A stretch of DNA of 63,846 nt, the filler included, from Octopus bimaculoides (lineage: Eukaryota): the NCBI RefSeq assembly GCF_001194135.2. It is 6 parts of 4 records of this genome, joined end to end, with 100 filler letters (N's around TTAATTAATTAA, not from the genome) between each part and the next. Parts side by side here need not be neighbours in the genome. Positions count along the whole stretch, not along the records: positions 17,713 to 37,355 come from NC_068992.1; 5 more parts are not named here. One strand, given 5' to 3'. Every line of letters starts with the position of its first letter. The first letter of the stretch is position 1. This document shows, one piece after another, positions 17,713-36,532 of the stretch. A model generated the notes under the pieces. It was not told where the DNA came from. It did not search any database and saw only the letters and a list, made by a program, of their open reading frames with translations. The translations under genes and the position numbers were made by a program.

Positions 17713-20700
17713 GTATTCCCAGTACAATGACGGATGAACGAAGTCGATTATCAGAAAGAGAGAGTACTATTAGATCGATATCAGATCAGCGAAGTCAGAT
17801 ATCGGGAAAAATGAGTATTCCCAGTTCAATAACGGACCGTCGGAGTGAAGTATCTGAAAGAGAGAGTATTCCCAGTACAATGACGGATCAACGAAGTCGA
17901 TTATCAGAAAGTGAGAGTACTATTAGATCGATATCAGATGGGCGAAGTCAGTTATCGGGAACAATGAGCATTCCCAGTTCAATAACGGACCGTCGGACCG
18001 AAATGTCTGAAAGAGAAAGTATTCCAAGTACAATGACGGATCAACGAAGTCGATTATCAGAAAGAGAGAGTACTATCAGATCGATATCAGATCAGCGAAG
18101 TCAGATATCTGGAACAACGAGTATTCCCATTTCAATAACGGACCGTCGAAGTGAAATATCTGAAAGAGAGAGTGTCCCAAGTACAATGACTGATCAACGA
18201 AGTCGATTATCTGAAAGAGAGAGTACTATCAGATCGATATCCGATGATCAAATTCATATATCGGGAACAATGAGTATTCCGAGTCCTATGATAGACCAGC
18301 GGAGTGAAGTATCTGAAAGAGAGTCTATCGTAAGTTGGATGCCAGACCATAGAAGTAGATTATCAGAAAGAGAGAGCACTGTCAGGTCGATATCAGATCA
18401 GCGAAGTCAAATGTCCAGAACAAGGAGTATTCCAAGTTCAACAACAGACCGTTGGAGTGAAGTAACTGAAAGAGAGTCTGTCCCCAGTACAATCACGGAA
18501 CAACGAAGTCGGTTATCGGAAAGGCAGAGTACTCTCGGATCGATATCAGATGAGCGGAGTCAGATATCCAGTTCAATGAGTATTTCCACTTCGGAAGCAG
18601 ACCGACGGAGTGATGTAACTGAAAGAGAGAGTATTCCCAGTACAATAACTGCTCATCGAAGCCGTTTATCAGAACAGGAGGTTACTCAGTCTCCTGTACC
18701 TGACGTTCAGAGTCCGATATCACAGAGAGAGAAAATCCATAGTTTGGTACCAGAAAAGTGGAGTCAAATATCAGAAAAAGAGAGAATGCTCGTCTCTACT
18801 GCAGACCAACGAAGCGCAACACCTAGCAAACGTACTATTCGCAGTTCAATAGCCGATATTCGTAGTCAAATATCCCGAAGTGTGAGAAGTCTCATATCTC
18901 CGTTAGATAAGCGGAGTCGCATATCAGAAAGGGAGAGCATTCAGACGGCGATAGCCTACCAGCTAAGTCAATTACCTGGTAAGGAGAACATTCCTAGTTC
19001 TCCGCCAGTCGAAGTGAGTCATATATCTGAAAGAGAGAGTATTCCTAGTTTAATGAGAGACCAACGTAGTCAGATATCTGGACGAGAGAGTATTCCCATT
19101 TCAATGGCTGACCAACGAAGTCAGATATCTGTAAAAGAGAGTACCCCCAGTTCAATGATTGACCAAGGAAGTATGTCATCTAGAAGAGAGAGTATACGTA
19201 GTTCAAAAGAAGAACAGCTTAGTCCAATAACAAGAATACAAAGTATCTCTAGTGAAATGGGAGATCAACACAGTCAGATTACTGGACGAGAGAGTACTCT
19301 TAGTTCAACAAGTGAACGGCGTAGCCGTGTGTCTCTAAGGCACAGTACTCCTAGTGCGATTGCACTCCAACACAGTATGTTATCGAGAAGCGACAGCAAT
19401 CTGAGTTCTGTACAAGATCAAGAAAGCCATATATCTGAACCACCACCTATTCGAGGTTCGCTCTCAGAGGAATGGAGTCAAATATCCGGAAAACATAGTA
19501 GAGTTAGCACAGTAACAGAACAATGGAGTAAATCATCGCGAACTGAGAGCCTACGTATTTCTGTACCAGACGAGCAGATAAGTGGAAGAGAGAGTATTCA
19601 AAGTCCACTGTCTCTCCAAAGGAGCGAAATGTTTCAAAGAGAAAGAATATATAGTAGTGTATTAGGTCAAAGGAGTCGGGATGATGAAAGTGCATCATTT
19701 AAAACTTCTATACCAGAACAGCAAAGTCGAATAACAGAGAAAGAGAGTATTGTTCGTTCAGTACCAGACCAACGAAGCCGGCTTTATGAAATGGTGAGTA
19801 CTGAGAGACCTTTCGCTGAAGAACGTCAGTTATCTAAAAGCGAAAGTAGTATTCAGTCTGGTTCAGACGAACGGAGTTATACATCTAGAAGAGAGATTAT
19901 TCGTAGTTCAACAACAGAACCGAGCCTAATATCAAGAAGAGAAAGTATTCCTGGTTCAATGATAGACCAACGTAGTCAGATATCTGGAAAGGAGAGCACC
20001 CTCAGTTCAATGACAGACCAACGAAGTCAAATATCTGGAAGAGAGAGTACTCCCAGTACGATGAGAGACCAACGAAGTCAGATATCTAGAAGGGAGAGTN
20101 NNNNNNNNNNNNNNNNNNNNNNNNNNNNNNNNNNNNNNNNNNNNNNNNNNNNNNNNNNNNNNNNNNNNNNNNNNNNNNNNNNNNNNNNNNNNNNNNNNNN
20201 NNNNNNNNNNNNNNNNNNNNNNNNNNNNNNNNNNNNNNNNNNNNNNNNNNNNNNNNNNNNNNNNNNNNNNNNNNNNNNNNNNNNNNNNNNNNNNNNNNNN
20301 NNNNNNNNNNNNNNNNNNNNNNNNNNNNNNNNNNNNNNAACGTCAGTTATCTAAAAGCGAAAGTAGTATTCAGTCTGGTTCAGACGAACGAAGTCAGATA
20401 TCTGGAAGAGAGAGTATTCCCAGTTCAATGAGAGACGAACGAAGTCAGATATCTGGAAGAGAGAGTACTCCCAGTTCCATGAGAGACGAACGAAGTCAGA
20501 TATTTGGAAGAGAGAGTACTCTCAGTTCAATGAGAGACGAACGAAGTCAGATATCTGGAAGAGAGAGTATTCCCAGTTCCATGAGAGACGAACGAAGTCA
20601 AATATCTGGAAGAGAGAGTATTCCAAGTTCCATGAGAGACGAACGAAGTCAGATATCTGGAAGAGAGAGTACTCCCAGTTCAATGAGAGAACAACGAAGT

Positions 20701-22980
20701 CAGATATCTGGAAGAGAGAGTACNNNNNNNNNNNNNNNNNNNNNNAAGTTCCATGAGAGACGAACGAAGTCAGATATCTGGAAGAGAGAGTACTCCCAGT
20801 TCAATGAGAGAACAACGAAGTCAGATATCTGGAAGAGAGAGTACTCCCAGTTCAATGAGAGACGAACGAAGTCAGATATTTGATCGAATGCGCAGTTCTA
20901 TACCAGACCAAAGAAGTCATATTTCTGAACGAGATAGTATTTACAGTTCAGAGCAGCACAGTCACGTATCAGAAAGAGACAGTCACTTTAGTTCAATACC
21001 AGAACAACGGACACAAACATCGAGAAGTGAGAGTAGTCTTAGTTCAATAGTAGGTCAACCGAGTGAGGCATCTGTATCTGAGAGTATGCTTCGTTCTACT
21101 CCCGATGAACAGCTTCAGATATCTAGAGGAGACAGTGTTCGTAGTTCAATTCCCAGCCAGCGCAGTCAGATATCAGATAGATGGAATACATTTAGTTCTA
21201 TGCAAGACCAGCAGAATCAGGTCTCTGGTACAGAGAGTATTCTTAGTTCGATACCAGATCAGTGGAGTCGGGTATTTCTCAGAGAGAGTATTCAAAGATC
21301 AGTACCAGACCAGTGGAGTCAGACATCTGAAAGTGAGAATATTCGCCAAACTATAGCACCTCATTTGACATACATATCTGCAAGAGAGAGTACTCCCAGT
21401 TTAATAGTAGAACGAGGGAGTCATACATCTGAAAGTTCTATATCTGACCAGCGGAGCCAGATTACTGGAAAGGAGAGTTTTGTCAGTTCATTACCAGATC
21501 AAGGAAGTCCAGTAACAGACCGACGGAGACAGGCGTCTGAAAGAGAGAGTAGTTTTAGTTCAGTTCCAGGTCACCGCAGTCAAATATTCCAAAGTGAGAG
21601 TATTCCAAATTTAGCAGCTGACGAAATGAGCCACATATCTGGAAGTGAGAAAGTTTACACTCCTGTATCTGACGAATGGAGACAATCATCTAGAAATGAA
21701 AGCATTGTAAGTTCAACACCATTTCAACGGAGTCAAATATCAGGAAGAGAGAGTACTCACAGTTCTATTCCAGAGCAGCGGGGTTTGATGTCTAAAAGCC
21801 AGAGTATTTCCAGCACAATTCAAGATCAACTCAGTCAAATATATGGAACCGAGAGTATTCATAGTGGAATAGTAGGCCAAGGAATGTCTTCAATAGAGAG
21901 TGCTCCAGATTCTGTACTTAGCAGATATAGTCCCATGTCTGAAAGAGAAAGGTCTCCCAGATCTGTGTCAGACCAGCAGAGTCAACTATCTGATATAAAG
22001 AGTATTCATTCAATACCAGAACAACAAAATCAAATACTAGAAAGAGAGAGACTACACAGTTCTATTACGAGCCAACGAAGTCAGATATCTGGAAGAGAGA
22101 GTACACCTAGTTCAATGATACTTCAACGGAGTCAGATATCCGGAAGAGAGAGTATACCTGGTTCCATGATGGACCAGCGGAGTCAGATATCTGGAAGAGT
22201 GAGTACTTCCAGTTCAATGAGAGACCAACGAAGTCAGATATCTGGAAGAGAGAGTATTCCTAGTTCAGTGACAGACCAGCGGAGTCAGATATCCGAGCGA
22301 GAGAGTACCTCCAGGTCAATGACAGACCAACGAAGTCAGATATCTGGAAGAGAGAGCACTCTCAGTTCAACGACAGACCAACGAAGCCAGATATCTAGAA
22401 GGGAGAGTATTCCTAGTTCAAACCAGCGAAGTCAGATATCTGGAAGAGAGAGTACCCCCAGTTCAATGAGAGACCAACGAAGTCAGATATCTGGAAGAGA
22501 GAGTACCCCCAGTTCAATGAGAGACCAACGAAGTCAGATATCTGANNNNNNNNNNTCTGGAAGAGAGAGTACCCCCAGTTCAATGAGAGACCAACGAAGT
22601 CAGATATCTGAAAGAGTGAGTACACCAAGCTCAATGACAGACCAACGAAGTCAGATATCTGAAAGAGTGAGTATACCAAGCTCAATGACAGACCAACAAA
22701 GTCATTTATCTGGAAGGGAGAGTATTCCTAGTTCAATGATGGAGCAGCAAAGCCAGATATCTAGAAGAGAGAGTACCCCCAGTTCAATGAGAGACGAACG
22801 AAGTCAGATATCTGGAAGAGAAAGTACTCCTGGTTCAATGATGGGCCAGCAGAGTGAGATATCTGGGAGAGAGAGTATCCCCAGTTCAATGAGAGACGAA
22901 CGAAGTCAGATATCTGGAAGAGAGAGTACTCCCAGTTCAATGAGAGAGAGTACTCCAAGTTCAATGAGAGAGAGGAGTCA
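17713..22980 (+). repeat. Coding 51-bp tandem repeat array; 153-bp higher-order repeat at 17715-18630
   Basis: Unit agtactcccagttcaatgagagaccaacgaagtcagatatctggaagagag; near-identical blocks at about 19950-20880 and 22070-22980. Confidence 0.95.
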
Positions 22981-24259
22981 CAGTTCAAGAACACAACTCT
23001 CTGGCAGTAGAGCTTCAACAGCTTCATCATCAAAATCTTTCCATCACTCATCCAAAGATGGCACTGATAGTAATCTATCGCCAGACAACCTGAGTTCAAG
23101 ATCCACCTCACATAAAGCAGTATCAGAAATATCAAGTGGCAGATCTATTAGGCAGGACAAGAACACTTCTGTTACTGAAGTCCTTGATGAGCTTAGTAGA
23201 AGTTCTCGCACTCAATCATCATCGACTGATTTGCCAGCTGGAATTCAACCAAGAGATTCATCTGTAGCCTCATCTCAACAATTCAGATCTGAAAGTGATG
23301 TTGCTTTAACTGAGGTATCGAATGAATCTTCTAGATCTCAACAGACTACGGTAGTTGGGAATGAGTCTGATTCTGTACGTTCTCTTTCAAAATCAAACAG
23401 TAGTCATTCTTCGCAAGCATCAAAGAGTGCCTCTTCAGATAAAATTAGCACCAACTCAAATGCTTTAAAAAGTACTCTTGACAAAAGTCAAAATAATAAT
23501 ATGACAAGTGCTAAAAAATATGCCTGGAAAACTGCAAAGAAATTTGACAAACCTGGTACCTCCCAAAAGAAAAAAAGTACTAACTTAAATAGCAAGAATT
23601 TTCCTGGTAACAGAAAGAAAAATCAAATTGATTCAAGTCAAAATGCAGACCAAGACAGATCTAATGACCAAATAGATAAGCCAGAAAATACTAGTTCAAC
23701 TGCTGCAGCTGAACGAAATGTAAAAAGTTTGTCAGATGGTTTCTCAAAGAAACAGGCAAAAAAGTCCCAAGGAAGGGAAAATATTAGTGAAGGAGAGTAT
23801 GTTTGTGAAGAAAATACTGAATCCAATCTTGACAACAATTCTAGCAATAATAAAGTGGTTGCATCTACATCTAGGTTTTGCAAAGATACTATAAAAGTAT
23901 GTAGTGAATCAGCTCATGGAATGCAGTCTTCAACAACAGACAAAGAATATGTTAACAAACTGGTCAAATCTGAAAAAGTCTATTATAATTTTCCAGAATC
24001 CTCTCGTAACCTCATAAACTCTGGAGATAAATTCAGTCTTTATGGAGCCCTTCGAAAAGATGGGAATCGTTATGTTTTCCGCTTAATGCAATACCTTGAA
24101 CAGACCTATGAAAACATTGATGGAGTAGCACGGCCATTGCAAGGAAGGAAAATATTAATTTCAAACTCTTACGTGTTTAACAGATATCTTGATTGCTCTG
24201 GAGTACTTTCATTCATTACAAAGAAGCCCAAGTACCCATGTCTGAATAATCCAGATTAA
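17713..24259 (+). CDS. Giant repeat-protein coding segment (over 2000 aa): about 100 x 17-aa Ser/Arg/Glu/Gln repeats, linker, unique C-terminal domain; 5' end missing
   Basis: The same repeat frame is open in every sequenced block (17713-20099, 20339-20723, 20746-24259); frame changes occur only at N gaps; in-frame indels; stop TAA at 24257-24259; open right up to the upstream gap. Confidence 0.85.
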
Positions 24260-24443
24260 AACATAATCGTATATGAATTGTAATTATCCTTGTACCTATG
24301 ATCTTTTTTCTGAGAGTTTTTATCCAGAGCCCGATTTGAAGATCAAAAGAATGTCAAATTTTAGAATGAAAACTTTATCAAGACTATCCTGTCTCTAAAG
24401 GCAAAATCGACTTTAGTAAAATAATCAGAACAAATCAAACATT

Positions 24444-24449
24444 AATAAA
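24444..24449 (+). promoter_or_regulatory. Candidate polyadenylation signal AATAAA for the repeat gene
   Basis: AATAAA about 185 nt after the stop; common by chance in AT-rich DNA. Confidence 0.3.
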
Positions 24450-25062
24450 TTATTTATATAACGGAAAAAGTTCTTAATTTTAATGAATACAAGTTTCCTC
24501 ATTTATGCATACATATACATTTTTTTTTATTTTGAAAGAGAGAGAGAGAAGAACATGGGCTTAAATTTGTAATGCTGAAACATATGTAACAGATGAAAAA
24601 ATCATCTGCTACATATGTTTCAGTATTCAGTTACACATGATATCTCACTATAGATGCAATCTGTACACACACAGCATAAGGGCAGCATGCATTAGCAAAC
24701 ACATCTCCAGATATAGGATATGGTACCCTTATGAAGATGCATCTACAGATTGTATCGATTGTAAGACATCATGTGTTACCCAATGCCAAAACATATGTAA
24801 CAAATGAAATAGAGGAGTACCAGGTTCAAGCCCATGTTCTTTTTCCTCTCATTGCTGATGTGCTCATATATTACATTATCGCCCACATCAGACAGCACAG
24901 AACCCATGTAAATATGTAACAGCGGAAATTTAATGGGATTAACAATAATAGTCGAACCCTGAATGAAATAATTGTTGGGTGCTTAGCGCATCAAACTCTG
25001 TGTGTGTGTGTGTGTGCACGCATGTGTGTGTGTGCATGCATATATATATATATATATATATT

Positions 25063-25388
25063 TTGAGCGTGGCCGTTGCCAGTACCGCCTGACTGGCTCC
25101 CATAGGATTTTCGAGCGAGATCGTTGCCAGTGCCCCTGGACTGGCTTGTGCGGGTGGCACATAAAAGACACCATTTCGAGCGTGGCCGTTTTCGTGCGGG
25201 TGACACGTAAAAGCACCCACTACACTCTCTGAGTGGTTGGCGTTAGGAAGGGCATCCAGCTGTAGAAACTCTGCCAAATTAGACTGGAGCCTGGTGTTGC
25301 CATCCGGTTTCACCAGTCCTCAGTCAAATCGTCCAACCCATGCTAGCATGGAAAGCGGACGTTAAACGATGATGATGATGATGATGAT
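25063..25388 (+). mobile_element. Family D retroposon 3' part (RTE-like tail) ending in (GAT)n
   Basis: Near-identical to 59610-60018: aaaagcacccactacactctc...ggcgttaggaagggcatccagctgtagaaac...catgctagcatggaaagcgga. Confidence 0.85.
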
Positions 25389-25500
25389 ATCATCATCATC
25401 ATTTAACATCCATCTCCCATGCATGCATGGGTAGGACGGTTTACAAGAGCTGGCCAGGTAGGAAAACTGCCCTATGCTATTGTGTCTATTTTGGTAGGGT
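25389..25500 (-). mobile_element. Diverged family D-like tail in opposite orientation
   Basis: (ATC)n-atttaacatccatctcccatgcatgcatgggtaggacg is the inverted counterpart of the adjacent tail. Confidence 0.6.
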
Positions 25501-25759
25501 TTATGTATTTTCACATGCGTATACCCCTGTGTGTGTCTATGTTTAGTAAGAGTGTGTGTGGGGGGAATGTGCCTGCATTATCTGTATCCCCTGTTTATAT
25601 ATGTTTGTTTAATTTGTTTTTATTTATTTTGTTAATGTATATAGTTATTTAATTCCATTTGTTTATCTATGTATTGTATTATATCATATTCGTGTTATCA
25701 GTTTATGGGGATTTTATTCTGTCATAGGTTGTTGTGTGTTGTGGGGATGTGCTAGTGTT

Positions 25760-25903
25760 TCATTCTAGTTTCCTATTCAGGCTGGGTTTATCTTCTATTA
25801 TGTGTATAGCTTCTGTAATTTGTCTAAGCGTTGCATCTGTTCTATTTGTGGACAAAATATTAACTTCTATGTTGTTGAGCGAACCCCCACATACAATAGG
25901 AAT
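25760..25903 (-). pseudogene. Penelope-like element GIY-YIG endonuclease C-terminal fragment
   Basis: IPIVCGGSLNNIEVNILSTNRTDATLRQITEAIHIIEDKPSLNRKLE*; RxIxEAIxI...PSLN is typical of the end of PLE ORFs. Confidence 0.6.
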
Positions 25904-26089
25904 ACAAAATGGCTGATCATTAGTAAGGAAAGACACACAAAAAAGAAAGAAGAAAGCAAAAGACCACTGATTAGTTCCCAGAAGTGTGACAAAAGAACTC
26001 TGGTCGAAATATGATTAATATAAAATAGAGCTGAAGCAAATGAACACCAAATATATAGTGCATGTGTTTCCATTGGCTAAACTGACAAC

Positions 26090-26245
26090 TTGACCATCTC
26101 CAAATACAACAATATCTGTTTCAACACACGAATTCACATCAAGAATCTTGCAAAATAAATATATAAATGTAATATATATATATGCATATACATACATACA
26201 GATATATATATACATATATAAATACATATACATACATATACATAC

Positions 26246-26298
<53 letters not shown>

Positions 26299-26515
26299 CA
26301 TATATGGGTACAGGATGTCACAAACAGTAAACAACATGAAATACGAAAACAAATGAGTTGAATACACAAACAACAAGAGAAACAAAAGGAAAACAGGACA
26401 AGTAGTATAAAGAACGACCCTTCATCAGTTGTCGGCTGCCTACCTACTCTTCATTTCAAGCACTGAATGACAAAGGAGGAGTCGATAGGCAGCAAACAAC
26501 TGATGAAGATATTGT
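26090..26515. mobile_element. Probable PLE-associated interspersed repeat with internal microsatellite and inverted end
   Basis: 26120-26160 is the reverse complement of 46975-47015 (gcaagattcttgatgtg..t.cgtgtgttgaaa); inverted arms cttcatcagttgt / acaactgatgaag. PLE link is inference. Confidence 0.5.
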
Positions 26516-26519
26516 TTCT

Positions 26520-27020
26520 GCTCTTCAGCATTGGTTACCAGTTTGTTGTATTTCTCCATCAGCTCTTCCTGCAATATTGCTTACCACTTTGAATTCCATA
26601 TGCGATATCTCTTGCATTCGCATAACTTTCATCATCACTCCATTCTTCAGTATTTTTTTCAAGAAATGTGCAAGGCACCTCCAGGATTTCAAAGAATCTT
26701 TTTGTGTTGGCAGTAAAGAAATCCTGCAGTTGTTTCTGCCCAACTGATTCAGGATTTATTGATGCTCGTTTGCTCGGTTTTGAGTCAACTTGGTTTTGCA
26801 TAGCATGCTTCATTTTTGTTTTTTGTCTCATGCAAAACAGCTGAATCAAAAGATGCAAGCGTTACAAGCTCCTCAGAGAGGTACCACAAATGTCTCAAAA
26901 ACTTACTGAGTGCAGCACTTGCAATATTGTCATCCTTTTGCTTGTAGAGCTGCAGACTTTGCACAAAATGCAAATCTGAACGGGGGTGAGGGGAGGCGCA
27001 TGAGGGTATGGCTACCAAGT
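26520..27020 (-). pseudogene. Frameshifted DNA-transposase relic, C-terminal part (hAT superfamily, possibly hATm-like)
   Basis: HLWYLSEELVTLASFD, LQDFFTANTKRFFEIL and FKVVSNIAGR (cf. LKVVNDxAER) across three frames. Confidence 0.55.
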
Positions 27021-27114
27021 ATCACTATCTGTTGTATATCACAGCTGAAAAGCAGCAAACATCTCTCAGTCCTTTTTCCTCTTTCTCTCAGTTAGTTTAA
27101 ACTGTGATTTAAAC

Positions 27115-27411
27115 CAGGGGTTTTCAAACTGTAATCCGCGGACCACAGGGGGTCCGCAAGGACAAGACAGGGGGTCTGTAGACAGCAAATACTTTTTATG
27201 GGCAATTTGATTTTATATATGTTTTTTAATCGAAATCTTTTAATTGACAATAAACCTATTTGTTAAATACTGTTAAATAAATAAATGTAAAAATATATGT
27301 TATTTTAAGCAAATATTTATGTTTAAATTTCATATGCATTTATAAGGGGGTCCCTAAGGTAAAGCCTGAAATATAAAGGGGTCCGCAAGTCAAAAAGTTT
27401 GAAAACCCCTG
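27115..27411. mobile_element. hAT (Charlie-type) MITE, 297 bp
   Basis: Perfect 16-bp TIR CAGGGGTTTTCAAACT / AGTTTGAAAACCCCTG and perfect 8-bp TSD ATTTAAAC (27107-27114; 27412-27419). Confidence 0.95.
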
Positions 27412-27459
27412 ATTTAAACATCTAAATTTTAATGCAGTAAAATTAGCTTGGCCATCTAT

Positions 27460-28918
27460 CATGCTCTGGTGATAACCGCCAGGTACTTTTAAGCTGATTC
27501 CTGATGGGTTATTGAATCCAGATATCAATTACAAAGCAGTGCCAAGCTCTGGATTACCTCAGGTATGGTCAGCTAATAGAGCTAGGCTCCAGATCATTGA
27601 TTCTAATTATGTCCACTAATAGAACCAAACTCTGTATTATACACTTTTAGGAGTGATTAGCTTATAAAAACAAACTCTGGATTATAGATCCCAGGTACGG
27701 TTACCTAATAGTGTCCAGCTCTGAATTACTGATTAAGGGTATGGTCACCCGACAGTACAATGCTGTGATTCTTTATACCAAATATGGTCACCTGATGCTG
27801 CCAAATTCTGGAGATATATAATAACATAAAACACTTGATTACTGATTTCTGATATGGTTGACCTTATTGTGTAAAATTCTGCATTATTGATCTTGACTAT
27901 TGTCGCCTAATATTACCAATTCTAAATTATTGATCCTAGCAATGTTTATCTAACAGTTCCAAGTTTTGGGTTATTGAGCTCAAGAATGGTCAACTAACAG
28001 AGCCAAACTTTAGATTATTGATCCCAGATATGAAAGGCCTAAAGGGTCCAATTCTGGATTATGGATTCTAAGTATTGTCATCTAATATTGTCAGGTTTTG
28101 GATTACTGATTACATATTTAGTCACCAGATAGTGCCAAGCTCTAATTGTTGATTTCAAGTATGGTTACCTACGAGTGTCAAGGGGTGGATTATAGATCCT
28201 AGGTATGATTGCCTACCTGTGCAAAGTTTGGGATTATTGATCCCAAATACAATCGCCTAATCATGTCAAGGTCTGGATTATTGATTCCAGTTATTGTCTT
28301 GTAATAAGTGCCAAGTTCCAAATTATTGATTCTAGATATATTGATCCAAGGTAAACGTCACCTAATAGTGTCAAGTTCTGGGTTATTGATCTCAAGTATG
28401 ATTGCATCATAGTGACATGGGCTGGCTTATTGCTACCAAGTATTGTTTATGTGATAATAATTCCAAGCTATGAATTATTGATCCCAAGTACACTTACCTA
28501 AGCGTGCTATACTCTGAATAATTATTTTCACCTAATAATGACAAGCTGTGGATCACTGGTCCTACCTATGTTCACCCAGTGGTGCTAATTTCTGGATTAT
28601 GAATCTCAAGTAATATCATTTAATGGTGCCAAGCTCTGGGTTATTACAAAACAATAACTGGAATAAATAATTCAGTGCTTGACATGATAAGGCAATCATA
28701 CATGGGATCAATGATCCTAAACTTTACACTAGTTGGTGATCATACTTAGGATCGATAATCTACAAATTGACCCTCTTGTCCAACAGTGTCAAGTTCTGAG
28801 TAATTGATTGCAAGTATGGTTGTTCAATTATGCCAAGCTCTGGAGCACTGATCCCAGATATGTTTACTTAATGATCAAGTTCTGGAGTTGAGAGACTAGG
28901 TATGGTCTCCTAATTGTG
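27460..28918. repeat. Highly diverged 44-bp tandem array (about 30 units) with an inverted block at 28649-28771
   Basis: Approximate consensus GTCAAGYTCTGGATTATTGATCCCARGTATGGTCACCTAATAGT; period counted by hand on several units. Confidence 0.85.
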
Positions 28919-29409
28919 AATTGGAGACATTAGTTGTGCCAACAGGGAGAGATTGAAAATTTTAAGACTGCTTCCGAGAACTAAGAAGAAAGAGTTATGA
29001 AGTAATCAACATAGAAGGGAATAGTAGGTTTGGCACCAACTTCAAACATTGAAATTTATGCACATCTCCTCAGTGCATGCCATTATGTGTTGGTGTTGGT
29101 GAAAATATTGTCCCTTTCTTGATGGCAAGGACTACGCATTGGATTATATTTGGTTCAATAAAACACAATTTATTCAGTATCTGCATTTGAAGCAGACTAC
29201 AAGATATTCCTAGGTATGGAACAAATGTCAATAGATTGAAGATGCATCAAGGAATTATATTATGCAAAGATTCCAGATTAACTGGAATCATAACCAGAAA
29301 GACAAAATGATGGCAGCAGCTTCATTTATTTATTATGTCGATACAGGCTTATCTGTTTTACTGCGGAACACAGATATATCATCGCAAATTTTCAGTACTT
29401 TTAACTCAC

Positions 29410-29629
29410 TTTACTCTCTCTTTCTCTTTTACTTGTTTCAGTCATTTGACTGCGGCCATGCTGGAGCACCGCCTTTAGTCGAATCAAATCGACCCCAGGA
29501 CTTATTCTTTGTAAGCCTAGTACTTGTTCTATCGGATATCTTTTTGCCGAACCGCTAAGTTACGGGGATGTAAACACACCAGCATCGGTTGTCAAGCGAT
29601 GGTGTGGGGACAAACACAGACACACAAAC

Positions 29630-29660
<31 letters not shown>

Positions 29661-29820
29661 TACGACGGGCTTCTTTCAGTTTCCGTCTACCAAATCCACT
29701 CACAAGGCTTTGGTCGGCCCGAGGCTATAGTAGAAGACACTTGCCCAAGATGCCACGCAGTGGGACTGAACCCGGGACCATATGGTTGGTAAGCAAGTCA
29801 CTTACCACACAGCCACTCCT
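29410..29820 (-). mobile_element. tRNA-derived SINE family B, full length, with internal (TA/CA)n
   Basis: Minus strand starts aggagtggctgtgtggtaag (A box), gggttcagtccc (B box), cttgggcaagtgtctt; ends gactgaaacaagtaaaagag; many partial copies elsewhere. Confidence 0.9.
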
Positions 29821-30954
29821 ACATATAATTTTTTTTCGAAATTTCATGTGATGTATGTCAGTATGTATGTGTATGAGCAAACCGATTACTTTTTCATATT
29901 AAATTCAGACAAAATCGTAATCTACACCATCTGAAGCGTATTTGTAGAAAATTTCATTACAAAACATTAATTTTTCTGGAAGTTATGAGGCAACAAAATC
30001 GTGTGTGTGACAGAGTACCGCATTTCTAGGTATGCTCCGCTAACATCGGTTGTCAAGCGGTGGTGGGCACAAACGCAAACACCCATCCATGCACACACAC
30101 ACACACGCACATGCTCGCACGTACGCACGCACACACACACACAATCTTTTATCTTTTGTTCCAGTCATCAGATTGCACAAATCGCCCTAATACTAATTCT
30201 CTCTCTCTCTCTTCCCCTCTCCCTCTCTCTCTCAATTTATATATTAAAATCAAAAGTTCTGCAAAACGATGTTTTATTGTACAGTCTAAGGGAGGTAACT
30301 CAAATCGGGGGCATTTACTCGTGTTAACATTTGGAATCTGTCGGCAACAAAAATTCTTCAAAACGCGTTTGTGAGATTATCGTCAGACCTTGAGATTGCA
30401 TTAGAATCTCATAAATTTCAATAAAATACTTCCAGAATAAACACAGTGTGATTATGCGTATGTTTATCCACGTCTAAATATGTTTATACACCAATATATA
30501 AGCTTCAGGCATGGTTATGTCGGGGAACAATTTTGCTTCGTAACTATGAATTTTTGGGATTAGTCTCACTACGCACGACATTGGAGCCAGTGTATGCAAC
30601 TAACGATTCGAGAATAACTAATATATCTTGTTTGTAGACAGATATATTGTGGAAAATCGTTGTAGATCGACGAATTATGAGAAACAGAAGACACGCTATA
30701 TACCGGTGATTTCGAATTAAAGTACATCGAAGTATATGTTCCGCATGGGACCCGCAATGCGGAAATAATTCCCTGTCGCTCTTCTCATCAAAGCTGGTAT
30801 TGGTAGACTAATGCACTGAAAAGCTTGTAATCAACGAAGTTCTTATCGAGAAAGTGATATGGTGTTACTGATAACGCTATTATTCACATTTTATTCACAT
30901 ATAAAATTGATAAAACCGTTATAACATTATAATGATGAAGGAAAATGTTGCATT

Positions 30955-31810
30955 CAGTGCTTAGGTGCACCACAACTGAATAGAAAAAAAAAAGAAAGAA
31001 GGGCCATCAGGTGTACTGTTGGCGGATTTCAGGAAGCATGGAAGTTTTGAAGTATGTAGTGTCTCGACAGCTAACAACTGATGCGGGTAGTTTATTCCGT
31101 GCTTCAGCAATTCTGAGCGTGAAAAAATGTTTCCGAAAGTCACGGGTGCTGTTTTTTAAAAAAATTTTATAAGCATGTCCGCGAGCATTTGCCACATGGA
31201 ATTCAAGAAGGTACCCAAGGTTGTTGCTGGAAAGATGGTAGATAATCTTGTGAGTGTCTACCAAGTTAGTTGCCGGACGTCTGAGCTTCAATGTATCCAT
31301 GCCCAGGGAAGCAAAACGCTCAGAGTATGATAAATGTCTGACGACGGGTATTCGTTTGGTTGCACGTTTCTGAACAGTCTCCAGGAGATTTATACGCTGA
31401 GCAAGATAGAGGTTGAAGACTGGAGATGCTAATTCCAAGTGTGGACGTACCATTGTCGTATACAATATTAAATAGATAGCTAGAGAGCGGCTGATAAAGG
31501 TCTTATTGAGTGATGCTAGCACCCCGCTCAGCCTTCTTGACAATTTTAGGGATGTGGTTTGTCCAACGCAGATCTTTGTTTACAATGGTGCCCAGATCAC
31601 ATCCGCTTGAAGACTTCTTGAGATTGGTGTTGCCGAGGGAGTATGTAAAGGCTGAATTTTTCCTCCCCAAATGAATGGGGACGCACTTGTCCACAGCTAG
31701 CTTGAGTTGCCAGTCAGAGATCAATTGCTGCATTGTATCCAGGTCTGATTGCAGGAAAGATCTATAGTGCATAGGATCTGTTGTTTTTATTTCGCGGTAC
31801 AGCTTGATGT
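30955..31810 (-). mobile_element. 5'-truncated CR1-group LINE (ORF2 from just after the YADD motif to the stop, plus short 3' UTR)
   Basis: LQSDLD...WQLKLAVDKC...DLG...DLRWTNHI; LYTTMVRPHLELASPV...LETVQKRATKRIP...LSYSERF...FFTLR...NKLP; one frameshift near 31520. Confidence 0.9.
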
Positions 31811-33043
31811 ATTGGTTGTTGTTTAGCACTCCCGGTCAAGGTCTGATCGAGCAGATATAAGATAAGCGCCATGGCAACCACGACCATCTCATCTTAGAGT
31901 TATTCCACGATTACCATTATCTAACGTTCCTTTTTTTACCTTTCCTTCGTAAAGTGTGTTGAGTGTTATTTAAGCGAGATTTAGCTGCTATTTCTGAAAG
32001 GTGAAGTTAAATGGCATTTTGTCGAATCATCTTCAACACATGCTTTCAATAATTTTATCATAATTTTGAATAACGAGTTAAATAGTGAGTCCACACAACT
32101 AGGGAATTTCCACAATTCATTTTCCGAATTATTTTTGCTCCAACTGTTACTCAGAGTTAATTCCCTTGATTTGAGTTACCTCCAGTTGACTGTACACTCT
32201 AGTATTATCTCNNNNNNNNNNNNNNNNNNNNNNNNNNNNNNNNNNNNNNNNNNNNNNNNNNNNNNNNNNNNNNNNNNNNNNNNNNNNNNNNNNNNNNNNN
32301 NNNNNNNNNNNNNNNNNNNNNNNNNNNNNNNNNNNNNNNNNNNNNNNNNNNNNNNNNNNNNNNNNNNNNNNNNNNNNNNNNNNNNNNNNNNNNNNNNNNN
32401 NNNNNNNNNNNNNNNNNNNNNNNNNNNNNNNNNNNNNNNNNNNNNNNNNNNNNNNNNNNNNNNNNNNNNNNNNNNNNNNNNNNNNNNNNNNNNNNNNNNN
32501 NNNNNNNNNNNNNNNNNNNNNNNNNNNNNNNNNNNNNNNNNNNNNNNNNNNNNNNNNNNNNNNNNNNNNNNNNNNNNNNNNNNNNNNNNNNNNNNNNNNN
32601 NNNNNNNNNNNNNNNNNNNNNNNNNNNNNNNNNNNNNNNNNNNNNNNNNNNNNNNNNNNNNNNNNNNNNNNNNNNNNNNNNNNNNNNNNNNNNNNNNNNN
32701 NNNNNNNNNNNNNNNNNNNNNNNNNNNNNNNNNNNNNNNNNNNNNNNNNNNNNNNNNNNNNNNNNNNNNNNNNNNNNNNNNNNNNNNNNNNNNNNNNNNN
32801 NNNNNNNNNNNNNNNNNNNNNNNNNNNNNNNNNNNNNNNNNNNNNNNNNNNNNNNNNNNNNNNNNNNNNNNNNNNNNNNNNNNNNNNNNNNNNNNNNNNN
32901 NNNNNNNNNNNNNNNNNNNNNNNNNNNNNNNNNNNNNNNNNNNNNNNNNNNNNNNNNNNNNNNNNNNNNNNNNNNNNNNNNNNNNNNNNNNNNNNNNNNN
33001 NNNNNNNNNNNNNTATACACACGCATATCTATACATATATACA

Positions 33044-33124
<81 letters not shown>

Positions 33125-33137
33125 ATATATATCCTCC

Positions 33138-33400
33138 CAGCCGCCTGGAGTACTGCTCTCAACTGTGGTCACAACATAGTGCCAAACTAACAGCGAGCCT
33201 GAAGCGAGCCAACGTCACAACACTCAAAAGACAGTTACAGTGCAGCAGATGAACTACTGGAAGAGGGTGACAAAGCGACGACATCACTCTTTGGATTGAA
33301 GATGCGACAGGTATGTAATAATCTATATGTGATAAATTCTGAAAATAGTTAATATCTAATTTCAGCTGAGAGTGTTATAGAGATTGCCTGATGGGTTATA
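33138..33400 (+). pseudogene. Degenerate CR1-group LINE ORF2 fragment
   Basis: RLEYCSQLWS, MNYWKR and RYVIIYM**IL motifs across frameshifts. Confidence 0.65.
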
Positions 33401-33425
33401 AAATACACAATGGTATCCCCTAACC

Positions 33426-33713
33426 CAGTGCTACTCAAAGTTTTAGTTAGACAGTCGGATTCCCCCAGTTCCGAGTCGACTGTTCACCGCCGGCCGAACG
33501 CCTGCCGCGCGTCGCTACCGGTATGCGGCGAGTTTCCAGAACAGAAAGAAATATTATAAAATGCTTATGAAATGCTTATCTAATATTGTATTATTTGTTT
33601 ACGAAATAAATATAAGATTAAAAAAAATTTGCCAACTTTTTTTATATTCATTATATATATTGTTTCCGGTATAAATTAATATTACTAAGAAATATTACCG
33701 GTCCCTGGCACAG
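33426..33713. mobile_element. Probable hAT MITE, left end; right end lost in the gap
   Basis: Starts CAGTGCTACTCAAAGT (hAT-like TIR) followed by GC-rich subterminal sequence; partner TIR not visible. Confidence 0.4.
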
Positions 33714-34342
33714 NNNNNNNNNNNNNNNNNNNNNNNNNNNNNNNNNNNNNNNNNNNNNNNNNNNNNNNNNNNNNNNNNNNNNNNNNNNGGGGAAACTGCT
33801 GGTACGCCACATTAGATAGTTTGAGAATCACTGCACTAAACCATCTAGTGTCAGTGGAGGTACTGTAAATAGGTTGGGGGTTCAAAGCCTCACAGCTCTT
33901 CAATACCCCGCAAAAAAAAAAAAGAAACATGTGCAATGTGGATGTGGATGTCTTCAAAAAGGAACTGGTGATTCTATTCTCTACGATATCAGATGAACCG
34001 ATTGCCCGGCATGAAGTATAGATGACGGAAAAGCACATACAGGAGTGATAATATGAAATCTTACCATCCTAAAAAGTCAGCCAAAGAAAATGTACAAAAT
34101 CACGATGGTGCTCCAGCATGACCACAGCCACGTTGCTGAAACGAATAAAAGAATATGTATGTATTGTGTCTTTCATTTTTTTTTCATTCATTTCAATCCG
34201 TTTCACCCTGCTTGCTTTTACGGATACTAATACCATGCTTAAAAATAAGTACCAGGATTGATCCGTTCAACTAAAGCCCCAATATTGCATGACGACAATC
34301 AAATGACTGGAACAAACAAAAGTATAAAAAGTAATATATATA

Positions 34343-34564
34343 CGAGAGGGTACTGAAAAGTTACTGGCTTTTACGATGTCCCAAAAGGCCTGGTTGGAGG
34401 CCCAACCTTCCGAGTTCTTTTACAGGGTTTACAAAAGCTGAAGGATCGCTGCAATAAGTAGGTGAATTTGAGAGGGGAATATGTTGAATAAAATCATAAT
34501 TAACTGATCCTCATGTATTTTGTTTTACTCAAACTTAAAACCAGGAGCTTTTCAGCATCCTTCG
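34343..34564 (+). mobile_element. mariner internal-deletion derivative
   Basis: Imperfect ~30-bp TIRs (ta-cgagagggtactgaaaagttactggcttt / aaaaccaggagcttttcagcatccttcg); internal GLQKLKDRCNK*VNLRGEYVE* is the mariner transposase C-terminus. Confidence 0.8.
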
Positions 34565-35104
34565 TGTATCTACATACATACATACATACATACATACATA
34601 CATACATACGTACATATNNNNNNNNNNNNNNNNNNNNNNNNNNNNNNNNNNNNNNNNNNNNNNNNNNNNNNNNNNNNNNNNNNNNNNNNNNNNNNNNNNN
34701 NNNNNNNNNNNNNNNNNNNNNNNNNNNNNNNNNNNNNNNNNNNNNNNNNNNNNNNNNNNNNNNNNNNNNNNNNNNNNNNNNNNNNNNNNNNNNNNNNNNN
34801 NNNNNNNNNNNNNNNNNNNNNNNNNNNNNNNNNNNNNNNNNNNNNNNNNNNNNNNNNNNNNNNNNNNNNNNNNNNNNNNNNNNNNNNNNNNNNNNNNNNN
34901 NNNNNNNNNNNNNNNNNNNNNNNNNNNNNNNNNNNNNNNNNNNNNNNNNNNNNNNNNNNNNNNNNNNNNNNNNNNNNNNNNNNNNNNNNNNNNNNNNNNN
35001 NNNNNNNNNNNNNNNNNNNNNNNNNNNNNNNNNNNNNNNNNNNNNNNNNNNNNNNNNNNNNNNNNNNNNNNNNNNNNNNNNNNNNNNNNNNNNNNNNNNN
35101 NNNN

Positions 35105-35144
<40 letters not shown>

Positions 35145-35280
35145 TACGTGCGTGCTGCTGTTTTTATCCCGACCGGCCGGTCTAATAGAGCAACTCAGTC
35201 ACTGTTGATCACTGTTTTTTAGTTAAAGCTATGGCTTTGAATTTGCCCGGAGTTGCCTCTCTTCGGTATTTTCCACTGAG

Positions 35281-36393
35281 AACATTCAACCCTCAAAAGT
35301 GAAGAATTGTGGCTAATTCTGATATGCCTCGGTTGGAGGGTGGTTAAAATAAAGGTAGCAAAGGTACAACCAGAAGTAAGCATCTCTTCACTGGTAGCAA
35401 CCGTATTATACGGCATAGAGAACAAAACAATAATTCTGCAAGTGCACAAAATGGAAAAGGAAAATTGGTCAGGCACAGGAATGGAATTATCGACACAGAT
35501 CAATTAGAAAGTATCGAAGCTATGCTGGATCTGATCAAGCTCCCTAATGGTACACAGCTATTCGTATCAGTCGAATGCAGAAAGCTGAGACGCCACATTT
35601 GTGGCGAGACAAACCACTCGCGTTGACGAAAACAAACTGGCTGGTCTGTTCCAGAGGACTTTCGGGTCGTGGCCTATGGATAATTTCCAGAAACCTCTGG
35701 CTTGATAGTGCTACTGGAGAGCATTGGTGGTTCGGGATAAACTTATCAGGCATGGGATTGCCGTCAGCTGGGTTTGGGTTTGTCAGAGATGCGTGCAGAG
35801 CGACAAAACTGGTCTGCACACTCTCGTCCGATGCTCTAGCATTACTGACTTGTGGATTTATGTCGAATACCAGCTATCGCGCGTAGGACGGATCCGGCTA
35901 TCTACTGAGTTCGTTGTGAAGAGCGTTCCACCGTCTTTGGCCGAGAAGAGCAGGTAGAGTTTCTTTGTCTGGTGGCCTTAGCGAAAGAGGTTGTATGGGG
36001 GTCCAGATTGAAAGGGCTGAAGATGGTTACTTTCCTCTTTGACCAAGTCCTCATCAACATTTTCAAGTTTCACTTGAAAAACCAAGTGTTGTTTGAGAGG
36101 GAAGTGCTACCTCCCAGCAATTTTATTGAACGCTGGGTGGTGAATGTGGCAAGAATGGTTCGAGTGGACAGGCCTATTCTAAGCATGGCTGAAGGAGTCC
36201 GATGAGGAGAGGGGCGACCTTGGTTTTGTGGACTTGTCACGAGCAGCCCAAGGGAGTCTCCCTTTTTTGGAGAATTTTACCTTGTTAAAATTTATTTTGT
36301 TTACACGCTTCGTTTTATGTAACTTCACGTTGTATTGTCCTGTACCGTCCTCAATGCTTTTTGTGAACCCTTAGTAGTTAATAAAGAAAACAC
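35281..36393 (+). mobile_element. L1/Tx1-like LINE derivative: ORF1 fragment joined to ORF2 C-terminus and 3' UTR
   Basis: LPNGTQLFVSVECRKLRRHICGETNHSR (gag-like knuckle remnant), then NFQKPLA**CYWRALVVRDKL...CQRC-x8-H-x4-C (zf-RVT type)...FIERW; AATAAA and (AAT)n tail. Confidence 0.7.
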
Positions 36394-36451
<58 letters not shown>

Positions 36452-36532
36452 TAGTTGTGATGCATGTGCCTGGTGTACCCTTATCAGACAGGTAGTCATG
36501 ATGGGTATACTGGGCTTCGTATATTTTACCCC
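36394..36532 (+). mobile_element. (AAT)n followed by a 5'-truncated copy of family F repeat
   Basis: 36452-36532 is the reverse complement of about 41510-41590 (gttgtgatgcatgtgcctggtgtacccttatcagac...). Confidence 0.8.

What the first reader, a model, noticed from the sequence alone, without database searches (positions are those of the whole stretch)
17713..24259. Giant, apparently intronless ORF of about 100 phospho-motif-rich 17-aa repeats: best candidate novel protein
Seen: over 6.5 kb of one open repeat frame, interrupted only by N gaps. The unit S[T/I]PSSM[R/T]D[Q/E]RSQISGRE lacks Cys and has almost no aromatics or Lys, with alternating Arg and Asp/Glu. Established: RxS/RRxS, S/T-P and SQ are basophilic, proline-directed and ATM/ATR-type kinase motifs, and such a composition predicts disorder. 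Inference: a very long polyampholyte that phosphorylation could switch, acting as a spacer, scaffold or condensate former. It recalls futsch/MAP1B-like or germline repeat proteins, but I recognise no homologue.
Basis: partly seen in the sequence, partly recalled or inferred. Interest (0 to 1): 0.75.

Follow-up and report, generated by a model that had tools for sequence, protein, structure and literature searches.

The report
Giant repeat tail of HAP2-like gene
The huge repeat-filled reading frame is real, but its last ~105 residues are the conserved tail domain of HAP2/GCS1 sperm-egg fusion proteins of molluscs, brachiopods and ribbon worms, so it is most likely the last exon of such a gene with a tail about four times longer than any relative found.

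Summary
The ORF is real. Four gap-separated segments (17715-20099, 20341-20721, 20747-22543, 22556-24259) each have exactly one stop-free + frame, 2,088 codons in all, ending at TAA 24257-24259. About 97-99 copies of a 17-aa unit fill 17713-22966. The last 1.3 kb is not repetitive. Continuity across the gaps is unproven: gaps 1 and 2 are out of frame as written and gap 3 is in frame, but both flanks of every gap carry the same repeat in the same codon register. Third-codon-position excess and pN/pS of 0.62 (1.14 and 0.85 off frame) indicate protein-level constraint.

The claim of no homologue fails. The last ~109 residues (23924-24250) match the extreme C-terminus of nine protein clusters (E 3e-17 to 4e-4), all HAP2/GCS1 ("hapless 2-like") proteins of bivalves, a brachiopod and nemerteans. 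A profile built without the window scores 107 bits. AlphaFold2 gives pLDDT 90, with no PDB fold match.

Homologues have tails of 268-595 aa and two or three introns in this domain. The window has at least 2,088 aa and none of those introns.

Best reading: the 3'-terminal exon of a probably molluscan HAP2-type gene with a hyper-expanded, disordered, Ser-rich linker. The ectodomain lies off the piece and is untested.

The parts
17715..20099 (+). ORF segment A, 795 codons, cut off at the piece's 5' edge. Units 1-18 form a 3-unit (153 bp) super-repeat, followed by degenerate units and then near-consensus units before gap 1.
   Evidence: Identity at lag 153 is 84-96% in the first 8 unit windows. 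There are 36 units in perfect register with no indel.
20100..20338 (.). Assembly gap 1 (239 N). The flanks are in the same repeat register, but the gap is out of frame as written. It would need 25 bases mod 51.
   Evidence: The 53 nt after the gap duplicate 19822-19874 exactly.
20341..20721 (+). ORF segment B, 127 codons, with young units 90-98% identical to the consensus.
20724..20745 (.). Assembly gap 2 (22 N). The repeat register needs 3 bases mod 51, so it is out of frame as written.
20747..22543 (+). ORF segment C, 599 codons. Young units lie at both ends, with about 24 degenerate units containing small in-frame indels in the middle.
22546..22555 (.). Assembly gap 3 (10 N). It is in frame as written. 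The 56 nt on each side are identical, so the contigs may overlap, and removing the overlap also keeps the frame.
22556..22966 (+). The last ~8 repeat units (start of segment D).
22967..23923 (+). Non-repetitive Ser/Asn/Lys-rich linker of about 319 aa. It includes Lys-rich patches such as KKYAWKTAKKFDKPGTSQKKK.
   Evidence: The 430-codon tail is open with P(no stop) = 2e-14.
23924..24250 (+). Conserved folded C-terminal domain shared with lophotrochozoan HAP2/GCS1 proteins (VYYNF...SG.KFSL.G...YEN.DG...P.YPCLN).
   Evidence: phmmer gives E 3e-17 to 4e-4 against 9 clusters. A profile built without the window scores 107 bits. The alignment is A1. AlphaFold2 gives pLDDT 90.3 and pTM 0.81. The VYYN-to-PxYPCLN spacing is 83 aa, against 81-83 in all homologues.
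24014..24120 (+). Positions of two introns conserved in Solemya, Mytilus, Lingula and Tubulanus HAP2 genes (about 24014-24019 and 24100-24120). A third, seen in Mytilus, maps to about 23918-23923. All are absent here, and the ORF runs straight through.
24257..24259 (+). TAA stop codon, 3 residues after PCLN. Homologues end 0-30 residues after the same motif.
24444..24449 (+). AATAAA, a candidate polyadenylation signal 185 nt after the stop.
   Evidence: This is a sequence match only.

Best explanation
The ORF is the 3'-terminal coding exon of a HAP2/GCS1-type ('hapless 2-like') gamete-fusogen gene from a lophotrochozoan, probably a mollusc. The signal peptide, class II fusogen ectodomain and transmembrane helix would lie upstream, off the piece.

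The part seen here would be the intracellular tail, which has three pieces:
- At least 97 copies of a 17-aa Ser/Arg/Glu/Gln-rich unit. They form a net-neutral, probably disordered polyampholyte of at least 1,660 aa.
- About 320 aa of non-repetitive Ser/Asn/Lys-rich linker.
- A ~105-aa folded end-domain that lophotrochozoan HAP2 proteins share.

Proposed mechanism, which is inferred rather than shown: the end-domain is the working part of the tail and binds a partner in the sperm cortex or cytoplasm that positions or gates the fusogen. The review PMC8777248 reports that changes to HAP2 cytoplasmic domains affect localisation and/or function, differently in different species. The repeat array would be a very long flexible tether or multivalent strip. 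Its size and charge could be changed by phosphorylating its roughly 440 serines.

The array grew by unequal exchange or slippage of 51-bp and 153-bp units. Selection kept the frame and key residues (Asp7, Arg9, Ser10, hydrophobic 12, Ser13, Glu16, Ser17). The ancestral 3' introns were lost.
For: Shown:
- Every segment has a stop-free frame.
- There is protein-level constraint. Codon-position-3 diversity is 0.50 against 0.36 for positions 1 and 2, Wilcoxon p = 0.012, in this frame only. pN/pS is 0.62 against 1.14 and 0.85 off frame. Ser13 is kept in 30 of 36 units while its third base is nearly saturated and all four TCN codons are used.
- The last 185 aa hit only 9 clusters among 1.84 billion representatives, and always at their extreme C-terminus.
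- Eight of the nine carry Pfam PF10699 HAP2-GCS1 (E 1e-13 to 7e-77). The ninth is a fragment whose cluster mate is a Tegillarca HAP2.
- The sources name these proteins 'hapless 2-like' in Pecten, Tubulanus and Lineus.
- A profile built without the window scores 107 bits on the window and hits nowhere else in the piece.
- Twelve columns are invariant, including P-x-x-P-C-L-N just before the stop.
- AlphaFold2 gives pLDDT 90.3.
- The homologues share the layout TM, juxtamembrane block, variable linker of 56-373 aa, then end-domain. The closest relative, P0001, itself has about 16 copies of a 10-aa repeat in that linker.
- PMC8777248 states that HAP2 cytosolic domains range from almost nothing to 500 residues or more, and that altering them affects localisation and/or function.
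Against: - The defining HAP2 ectodomain and TM helix are not in the piece, so the link to a fusogen is inferred from 9/9 co-occurrence only.
- The loss of all three conserved introns could mean a retrocopy or a tail-only derivative gene.
- No expression or peptide data could be checked.
- Frame continuity across gaps 1 and 2 is unknown.
- No protein more than 43% identical exists in the collection, so no gene model for this locus or a close relative was available.
- The homologues have a second conserved hydrophobic stretch after the TM helix. If it spans the membrane, the tail would be extracellular rather than cytoplasmic.
- Disorder, phosphorylation and tethering are all inferences.
Confidence: 0.6

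Rival explanations
1. This is a tail-only derivative or retrocopy. A processed copy or duplicated 3' part of a HAP2 gene now encodes a soluble, non-fusogenic repeat protein carrying the HAP2 end-domain, or is a second intronless HAP2 paralogue.
For: All two to three intron positions conserved in three phyla are missing. The whole 6.5 kb is one ORF. No HAP2 ectodomain or TM sequence is in the piece.
Against: - The domain was found only at the end of HAP2 proteins, 9 of 9.
- There is no poly(A) tract remnant after the AATAAA.
- 3'-biased intron loss in otherwise normal genes is a well-known process (established knowledge).
- The ORF runs off the 5' edge, so nothing says the ectodomain is missing.
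Confidence: 0.22
2. This is a decaying pseudogene or an exonic minisatellite that is open only because a stop-free 51-bp unit expanded recently. No functional protein is made.
For: The young blocks are 90-98% identical and would be open regardless of selection. There is no expression evidence. The locus is unannotated in the collection. pN/pS of 0.62 is only moderate constraint.
Against: - The degenerate parts (439 and 395 codons, units often only 50-65% identical to the consensus) have no stop, with P about 2e-13 and 3e-12.
- The 430-codon non-repeat tail is open, with P = 2e-14.
- The third-position excess and pN/pS below 1 appear only in the open frame.
- All invariant residues of the end-domain are intact.
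Confidence: 0.08
3. One reading: an unrelated novel cytoskeletal or condensate scaffold of the futsch/MAP1B kind, with no known homologue.
For: The repeat region itself has no detectable homologue and no Pfam domain. Its composition fits a disordered polyampholyte.
Against: There is a clear, full-length match of the C-terminus to the HAP2 tail domain. There is no MAP1 or other cytoskeletal domain.
Confidence: 0.04
4. The array is largely an assembly artefact, with haplotype copies or collapsed and duplicated repeat contigs stitched in tandem. The true tail would then be much shorter or of quite different length.
For: There is an exact 53-nt duplication across gap 1 and a 56-nt identical overlap across gap 3. 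All gaps lie in near-identical units.
Against: More than 50 degenerate units are each unique in sequence and cannot be duplicates of one another. Segments A and C alone give 1,394 contiguous-in-frame codons. Collapse of near-identical repeats usually under-counts copies.
Confidence: 0.06

Closest known systems
HAP2/GCS1 (hapless 2) gamete fusogens of Lophotrochozoa, for example Pecten maximus XP_033735139.1, Tubulanus polymorphus XP_074662084.1, Lineus longissimus XP_064623729.1, Solemya velum KAL5009314.1 and Lingula anatina XP_013385945.1
   Same: - The C-terminal ~105-aa domain is shared at 29-43% identity and aligns end to end.
- The VYYN-to-PxYPCLN spacing is the same (81-83 aa).
- The stop codon falls a few residues after PCLN.
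- A variable, charged, Ser-rich linker precedes the domain (23% Ser in Lineus).
   Different: - The linker is at least 1,970 aa, against 56-373 aa in the homologues. The whole tail is at least 2,088 aa, against 268-595 aa.
- The linker is made of about 97 copies of a 17-aa unit that has no counterpart in any homologue.
- The two to three introns in and before the domain are absent.
- The FSLCG cysteine is Tyr here.
- The ectodomain and TM helix are not visible in the piece.
P0001, an unnamed 1,163-aa HAP2-domain protein from RNA assemblies (Logan ERR14857104, ERR12370320/1); best hit, E 3e-17
   Same: It is the closest C-terminal domain by E-value and bit score (KPKYPCLN is identical). It has the longest tail among the homologues (595 aa). 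It carries a tandem peptide repeat (about 16 x 10 aa, TTGKQKEMSP) in the same linker.
   Different: The repeat unit is different and much shorter. Identity in the domain is only 37-41%. The species is unknown.
Long cytoplasmic domains of Chlamydomonas and Toxoplasma HAP2 (500 residues or more; PMC8777248)
   Same: Each is a large intracellular region on a HAP2 protein. The review reports that changes to HAP2 cytoplasmic domains affect localisation and/or function.
   Different: No sequence similarity was found. The cysteine-rich polybasic juxtamembrane motif described in that review could not be checked here, because that part of the protein would lie off the piece. The tail here is about four times longer and repetitive.
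futsch/MAP1B
   Same: Both are very long proteins with many short tandem repeats rich in phosphorylatable residues.
   Different: There is no sequence or domain similarity, and the C-terminus belongs to a different family.

Membership tests
HAP2/GCS1 gamete fusogens | Ectodomain with the HAP2-GCS1 domain (Pfam PF10699; class II fusion fold with fusion loops) | not testable with these tools
   It would lie upstream of 17713, outside the piece. tblastn of 14 HAP2 proteins finds no ectodomain match anywhere in 17713-37355.
HAP2/GCS1 gamete fusogens | Single-pass transmembrane helix between the ectodomain and the tail | not testable with these tools
   Upstream of the piece. The visible ORF has no hydrophobic segment (sequence).
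HAP2/GCS1 gamete fusogens (lophotrochozoan subgroup) | Conserved ~105-aa C-terminal domain ending in P-x-[YFH]-P-C-L-N close to the stop | tested here: met
   E 3e-17 to 4e-4 against 9 clusters, all HAP2. A profile without the window scores 107 bits. Twelve columns are invariant. Spacing is 83 aa against 81-83.
HAP2/GCS1 gamete fusogens (lophotrochozoan subgroup) | Gene structure: C-terminal domain split by two introns at conserved positions | tested here: not met
   The introns are present in Solemya, Mytilus, Lingula and Tubulanus at A1 columns ~61 and ~90-95. The window ORF is continuous through both. This is a structural difference, not a protein-level criterion.
HAP2/GCS1 gamete fusogens | Expression in male gametes and requirement for gamete fusion | not testable with these tools
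MAP1B/futsch microtubule-associated proteins | MAP1-type conserved N- and C-terminal regions | tested here: not met
   No Pfam family reaches significance in any segment. The C-terminus is the HAP2 tail domain instead.

The most novel reading that the evidence does not exclude
A gamete fusogen carries by far the longest intracellular tail found among its relatives here: more than 2,000 residues, about 100 selectively maintained 17-aa Ser-rich units. The tail ends in a confidently predicted domain confined to lophotrochozoan HAP2 as far as a single-sequence search shows, with no structural match in the PDB. The array would act as a phosphorylation-tunable tether or multivalent docking strip that controls where or when sperm-egg fusion can fire. 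That would be a new regulatory layer for HAP2 in animals.
Probability: 0.3. Interest if true: 0.7.

Novelty: new variant of a known kind. Interest (0 to 1): 0.5.

Why it matters
HAP2/GCS1 is the ancestral eukaryotic gamete fusogen. How its intracellular region controls fusion is still described as "under scrutiny" (PMC8777248). Full-text searches found no paper on molluscan, bivalve or cephalopod HAP2.

If the link to the ectodomain holds, this locus provides three things:
- A natural extreme of tail length, at least 2,088 aa against no more than about 600 aa in the homologues.
- A small folded tail domain of no known fold, conserved across three phyla, that can be tested as a partner-binding module.
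- An example of repeat expansion under purifying selection in a reproductive protein.

There is also a practical point. Because of the gaps and repeats, the gene seems to be missing from the protein sets searched, so HAP2 presence or absence calls for this lineage could be wrong.

Tried and rejected
- **Pfam on the three large ORF segments:** nothing significant.
- **Word-index protein search:** it found nothing with the non-repeat tail, with repeat segment A or with alignment A1. It even missed proteins that the exhaustive search did find, so those three negatives are weak.
- **AlphaFold2 on a single sequence of the last 185 aa:** pLDDT 33, unusable. It succeeded only with the 10-sequence alignment.
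- **Foldseek of the good model:** no match against the PDB (best E 0.37, TM below 0.32) or BFVD (best E 0.065). The PDB sequence profile search also found nothing below E 0.06.
- **Rfam on the whole piece:** no hit.
- **Pfam on five downstream ORFs:** no hit.
- **Exact look-ups of the Pecten and Lineus genes:** not on record.
- **Literature:** no paper on HAP2 in cephalopods, molluscs or bivalves, and none naming the run accessions behind P0001 and P0007.
- **Polybasic patch before the end-domain as a shared feature:** considered, but not consistent across homologues.
- **14-3-3 or PKA-type motifs as the main feature:** RRxS occurs only 5 times.
- **Species of origin:** could not be established. 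Identity is slightly higher to bivalves (41-43%) than to nemerteans or the brachiopod (36-38%).
Full report
**1. What is in the sequence**

The usable piece is 17713-37355. N runs at 20100-20338, 20724-20745 and 22546-22555 cut the finding into four segments.

Each segment has exactly one stop-free frame on the + strand:
- A: 17715-20099, 795 codons.
- B: 20341-20721, 127 codons.
- C: 20747-22543, 599 codons.
- D: 22556-24256, 567 codons, followed by TAA at 24257-24259.

Every other frame on either strand has 2 to 62 stops in segments A-C. The ORF is open from the first base of the piece, so its 5' end is cut off by the piece's edge.

**2. The gaps, tested first**

As written, the four open frames are in phases 0, 1, 2 and 2 (mod 3), so the ORF is not one frame in window coordinates.

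I compared the flanks with the 51-bp consensus:
- Gap 1 needs 25 bases mod 51. It is written as 239 N and is out of frame.
- Gap 2 needs 3 bases mod 51. It is written as 22 N and is out of frame.
- Gap 3 needs 46 bases mod 51. It is written as 10 N and is in frame.

At gap 3, the last 56 nt before the gap are identical to the first 56 nt after it. The contigs may simply overlap. Merging them removes 66 positions and keeps the frame.

At gap 1, the first 53 nt after the gap are identical to 19822-19874, a degenerate and otherwise unique unit (RQLSKSESSIQSGSDER) 278 bp before the gap. This is either a real segmental duplication or a haplotig or misjoin.

All three gaps lie in blocks whose units are 90-98% identical to the consensus. 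Short-read assemblies typically break in such blocks.

Continuity is therefore compatible with the data but unproven, and the copy number is uncertain. It is more likely under-counted than over-counted.

**3. The repeat**

The period is 17 aa (51 bp). Autocorrelation at lag 17 is 0.35-0.84. TRF reports periods of 51 and 153. An HMM of the unit finds 99 units. The repeat part (17715-22966 without gaps) is 1,658 aa, or 97.5 units.

The first 18 units form a 3-unit super-repeat. Identity at lag 153 is 84-96% in the first 8 unit windows and 73-80% in most of the next seven, against about 60% at lag 51.

The first 36 units are in perfect register with no indel, although many are only 55-70% identical to the consensus.

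Composition of the repeat part:

| Residue | Share |
|---|---|
| Ser | 26.5% |
| Arg | 12.5% |
| Glu | 9.2% |
| Ile | 9.0% |
| Gln | 8.5% |
| Lys | 1.2% |
| Cys | none |

Positive and negative charge fractions are 0.137 and 0.138. Mean scaled hydropathy is 0.382, below the Uversky boundary of 0.414.

**4. Coding or an accidental open minisatellite?**

Even with codon-position-specific base composition, the chance of no stop is 2e-13 for A, 1e-11 for C and 6e-14 for D. With bulk base composition it is 2e-13 and 3e-12 for the two degenerate stretches alone, and 2e-14 for the 430-codon non-repeat tail.

Among the 36 in-register units, nucleotide diversity is 0.36, 0.36 and 0.50 at codon positions 1, 2 and 3. 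The third-position excess is significant only in the open frame (Wilcoxon p = 0.012, against 0.87 and 0.89 in the shifted frames).

pN/pS is 0.62 in frame, against 1.14 and 0.85 off frame. It is 0.49 for super-repeat neighbours.

Some positions are held at the protein level:
- Ser10 is kept in 34 of 36 units.
- Ser13 is kept in 30 of 36 units while its third base is nearly saturated (0.69), and all four TCN codons are used.
- Asp/Glu7 is kept in 32 of 36 units with third-base diversity of 0.65.
- Aliphatic residues recur at positions 1, 5 and 12.

This is a coding sequence under moderate purifying selection.

**5. What it is**

The word-index protein search found nothing for the tail or the repeats.

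The exhaustive phmmer search of 1.84 billion cluster representatives, using the last 185 aa, found nine proteins at E 3e-17 to 4e-4. Each matched at its extreme C-terminus.

Eight of the nine carry Pfam PF10699 HAP2-GCS1, 'male gamete fusion factor' (E 7e-77 to 3e-13). The ninth is a fragment whose cluster mate is a Tegillarca granosa 'HAP2 domain-containing protein'.

The sources are:
- Bivalves: Pecten maximus 'hapless 2-like', Mytilus coruscus, Solemya velum and Tegillarca.
- The brachiopod Lingula anatina.
- The nemerteans Tubulanus polymorphus and Lineus longissimus, both 'hapless 2-like'.
- Two unnamed RNA-assembly proteins.

The alignment (A1) is collinear over about 105 residues. It has 12 invariant columns, including P-x-x-P-C-L-N a few residues before the stop.

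The distance from the VYYN motif to PxYPCLN is 83 aa in the window and 81-83 aa in all homologues.

A profile built from the homologues alone scores 107 bits (E 3e-33 in the piece's six-frame ORFs) at 23924-24250, and nowhere else. tblastn with 14 HAP2 proteins finds no ectodomain or TM match in the piece.

With the 10-sequence alignment, AlphaFold2 predicts a compact helix plus beta-rich domain at pLDDT 90.3 and pTM 0.81. Foldseek finds no significant relative in the PDB or BFVD. Pfam has no model for it.

**6. How it differs from its relatives**

In the homologues, the region from the TM helix to the C-terminus is 268-595 aa. It has a conserved juxtamembrane block, a variable charged linker of about 56-373 aa, and the end-domain.

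Here the visible tail is already 2,088 aa, and the array runs off the 5' edge. The review PMC8777248 describes 500 residues or more as 'extended' for HAP2 cytosolic domains.

The closest relative by score, P0001, has about 16 copies of an unrelated 10-aa repeat in the same linker. Repeat growth in this linker therefore has a precedent.

Gene structure also differs. In Solemya, Mytilus, Lingula and Tubulanus, the end-domain is split by introns at two conserved positions (A1 columns ~61 and ~90-95). A further intron precedes the domain. These map to window positions ~24014-24019, ~24100-24120 and ~23918-23923, where the ORF is uninterrupted.

That fits either 3'-biased intron loss or a retrocopy.

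A candidate AATAAA lies at 24444-24449. No poly(A) remnant follows it.

**7. Mechanism**

Shown: the open frame, the selection, the homology and predicted fold of the end-domain, the layout shared with HAP2 tails, and the loss of introns.

Inferred:
- The exon belongs to a gene that still encodes the fusogen ectodomain. This rests on the 9/9 association.
- The tail is cytoplasmic, by the canonical type I topology. The caveat is a second conserved hydrophobic stretch with a central Pro in the homologues.
- The repeats are disordered.
- The repeats act as a long tether or multivalent strip for the end-domain, possibly tuned by phosphorylation. SxxD/E occurs 129 times, RxS 79, S/T-Q 53, S/T-P 31 and RRxS only 5.

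The conserved aliphatic positions 1, 5 and 12 suggest that each unit may be a short binding motif rather than a pure spacer. [quoted passage not shown] The review PMC8777248 reports that altering HAP2 cytoplasmic domains affects localisation and/or function, differently in different species.

**8. Rivals**

- Tail-only derivative or retrocopy: confidence 0.22.
- Pseudogene or accidental minisatellite ORF: 0.08.
- Assembly artefact as the main cause of the array: 0.06.

The evidence for each is in the Rival explanations section.

**9. Novelty and verdict**

The locus is best filed as a new variant of a known kind: a HAP2-type gene with an unprecedentedly long, repeat-built tail and lost 3' introns.

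No protein more than 43% identical to its end-domain exists in the collection searched, so the gene appears unannotated. The paper searches found no study of molluscan or cephalopod HAP2.

Interest is moderate (0.5). The feature is striking, but the link to the ectodomain, expression and gap continuity are all untested.

Noticed in passing
window 31007-31829, minus strand: Two overlapping ORFs (178 and 108 aa) look like the C-terminal, post-RT part of a non-LTR retrotransposon ORF2. That resemblance is from memory (motifs like VRPHLE..SPV and QKRATK). Pfam gave no hit.
   Followed up: partly
window 19822-19874 and 20339-20391: An exact 53-nt duplicate of a degenerate, otherwise unique repeat unit sits on both sides of the 239-N gap. 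It is either a haplotig or misjoin, or a real segmental duplication inside the array.
   Followed up: partly
window 22490-22545 and 22556-22611: The 56 nt before the 10-N gap are identical to the 56 nt after it, so the two contigs may overlap rather than being separated.
   Followed up: yes
P0001 residues ~745-885 (locus L001, RNA contig): The closest HAP2 relative carries about 16 tandem copies of a 10-aa unit (TTGKQKEMSP) in the same tail linker. This looks like an independent repeat expansion at the same place.
   Followed up: partly
Homologues P0004 638-656, P0010 474-492 and equivalents in P0001, P0003, P0008 and P0009: A second conserved hydrophobic stretch with a central proline lies about 60-75 aa after the TM helix of lophotrochozoan HAP2 proteins. 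It could be a hairpin or a second TM helix. If it spans the membrane, the whole tail would be on the other side.
   Followed up: no
L005 (Solemya), L006 (Tubulanus), L007 (Lingula), L008 (Mytilus): Two intron positions inside the HAP2 C-terminal domain are conserved across three phyla. The Tubulanus gene is compact (4.6 kb), whereas the bivalve genes span 35-45 kb.
   Followed up: yes
L006 6403-6556, minus strand: The neighbour of Tubulanus HAP2 is a 1,471-aa DEAD/Helicase_C/Tudor protein, an architecture typical of germline helicases.
   Followed up: no
window 25005-25041, 26155-26295, 33031-33124, 34571-34616, 35105-35142, 36394-36451, 36834-36884: There are many microsatellites: (TG)n, (ATAC)n, (AT)n and (AAT)19. 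There are also four further N gaps downstream of the gene. This is typical of a repeat-rich short-read animal assembly.
   Followed up: no
tool behaviour, versus 17: The word-index homology search with alignment A1 returned nothing, although the nine HAP2 proteins exist in the same collection. Its negatives for this finding should be given little weight.
   Followed up: yes
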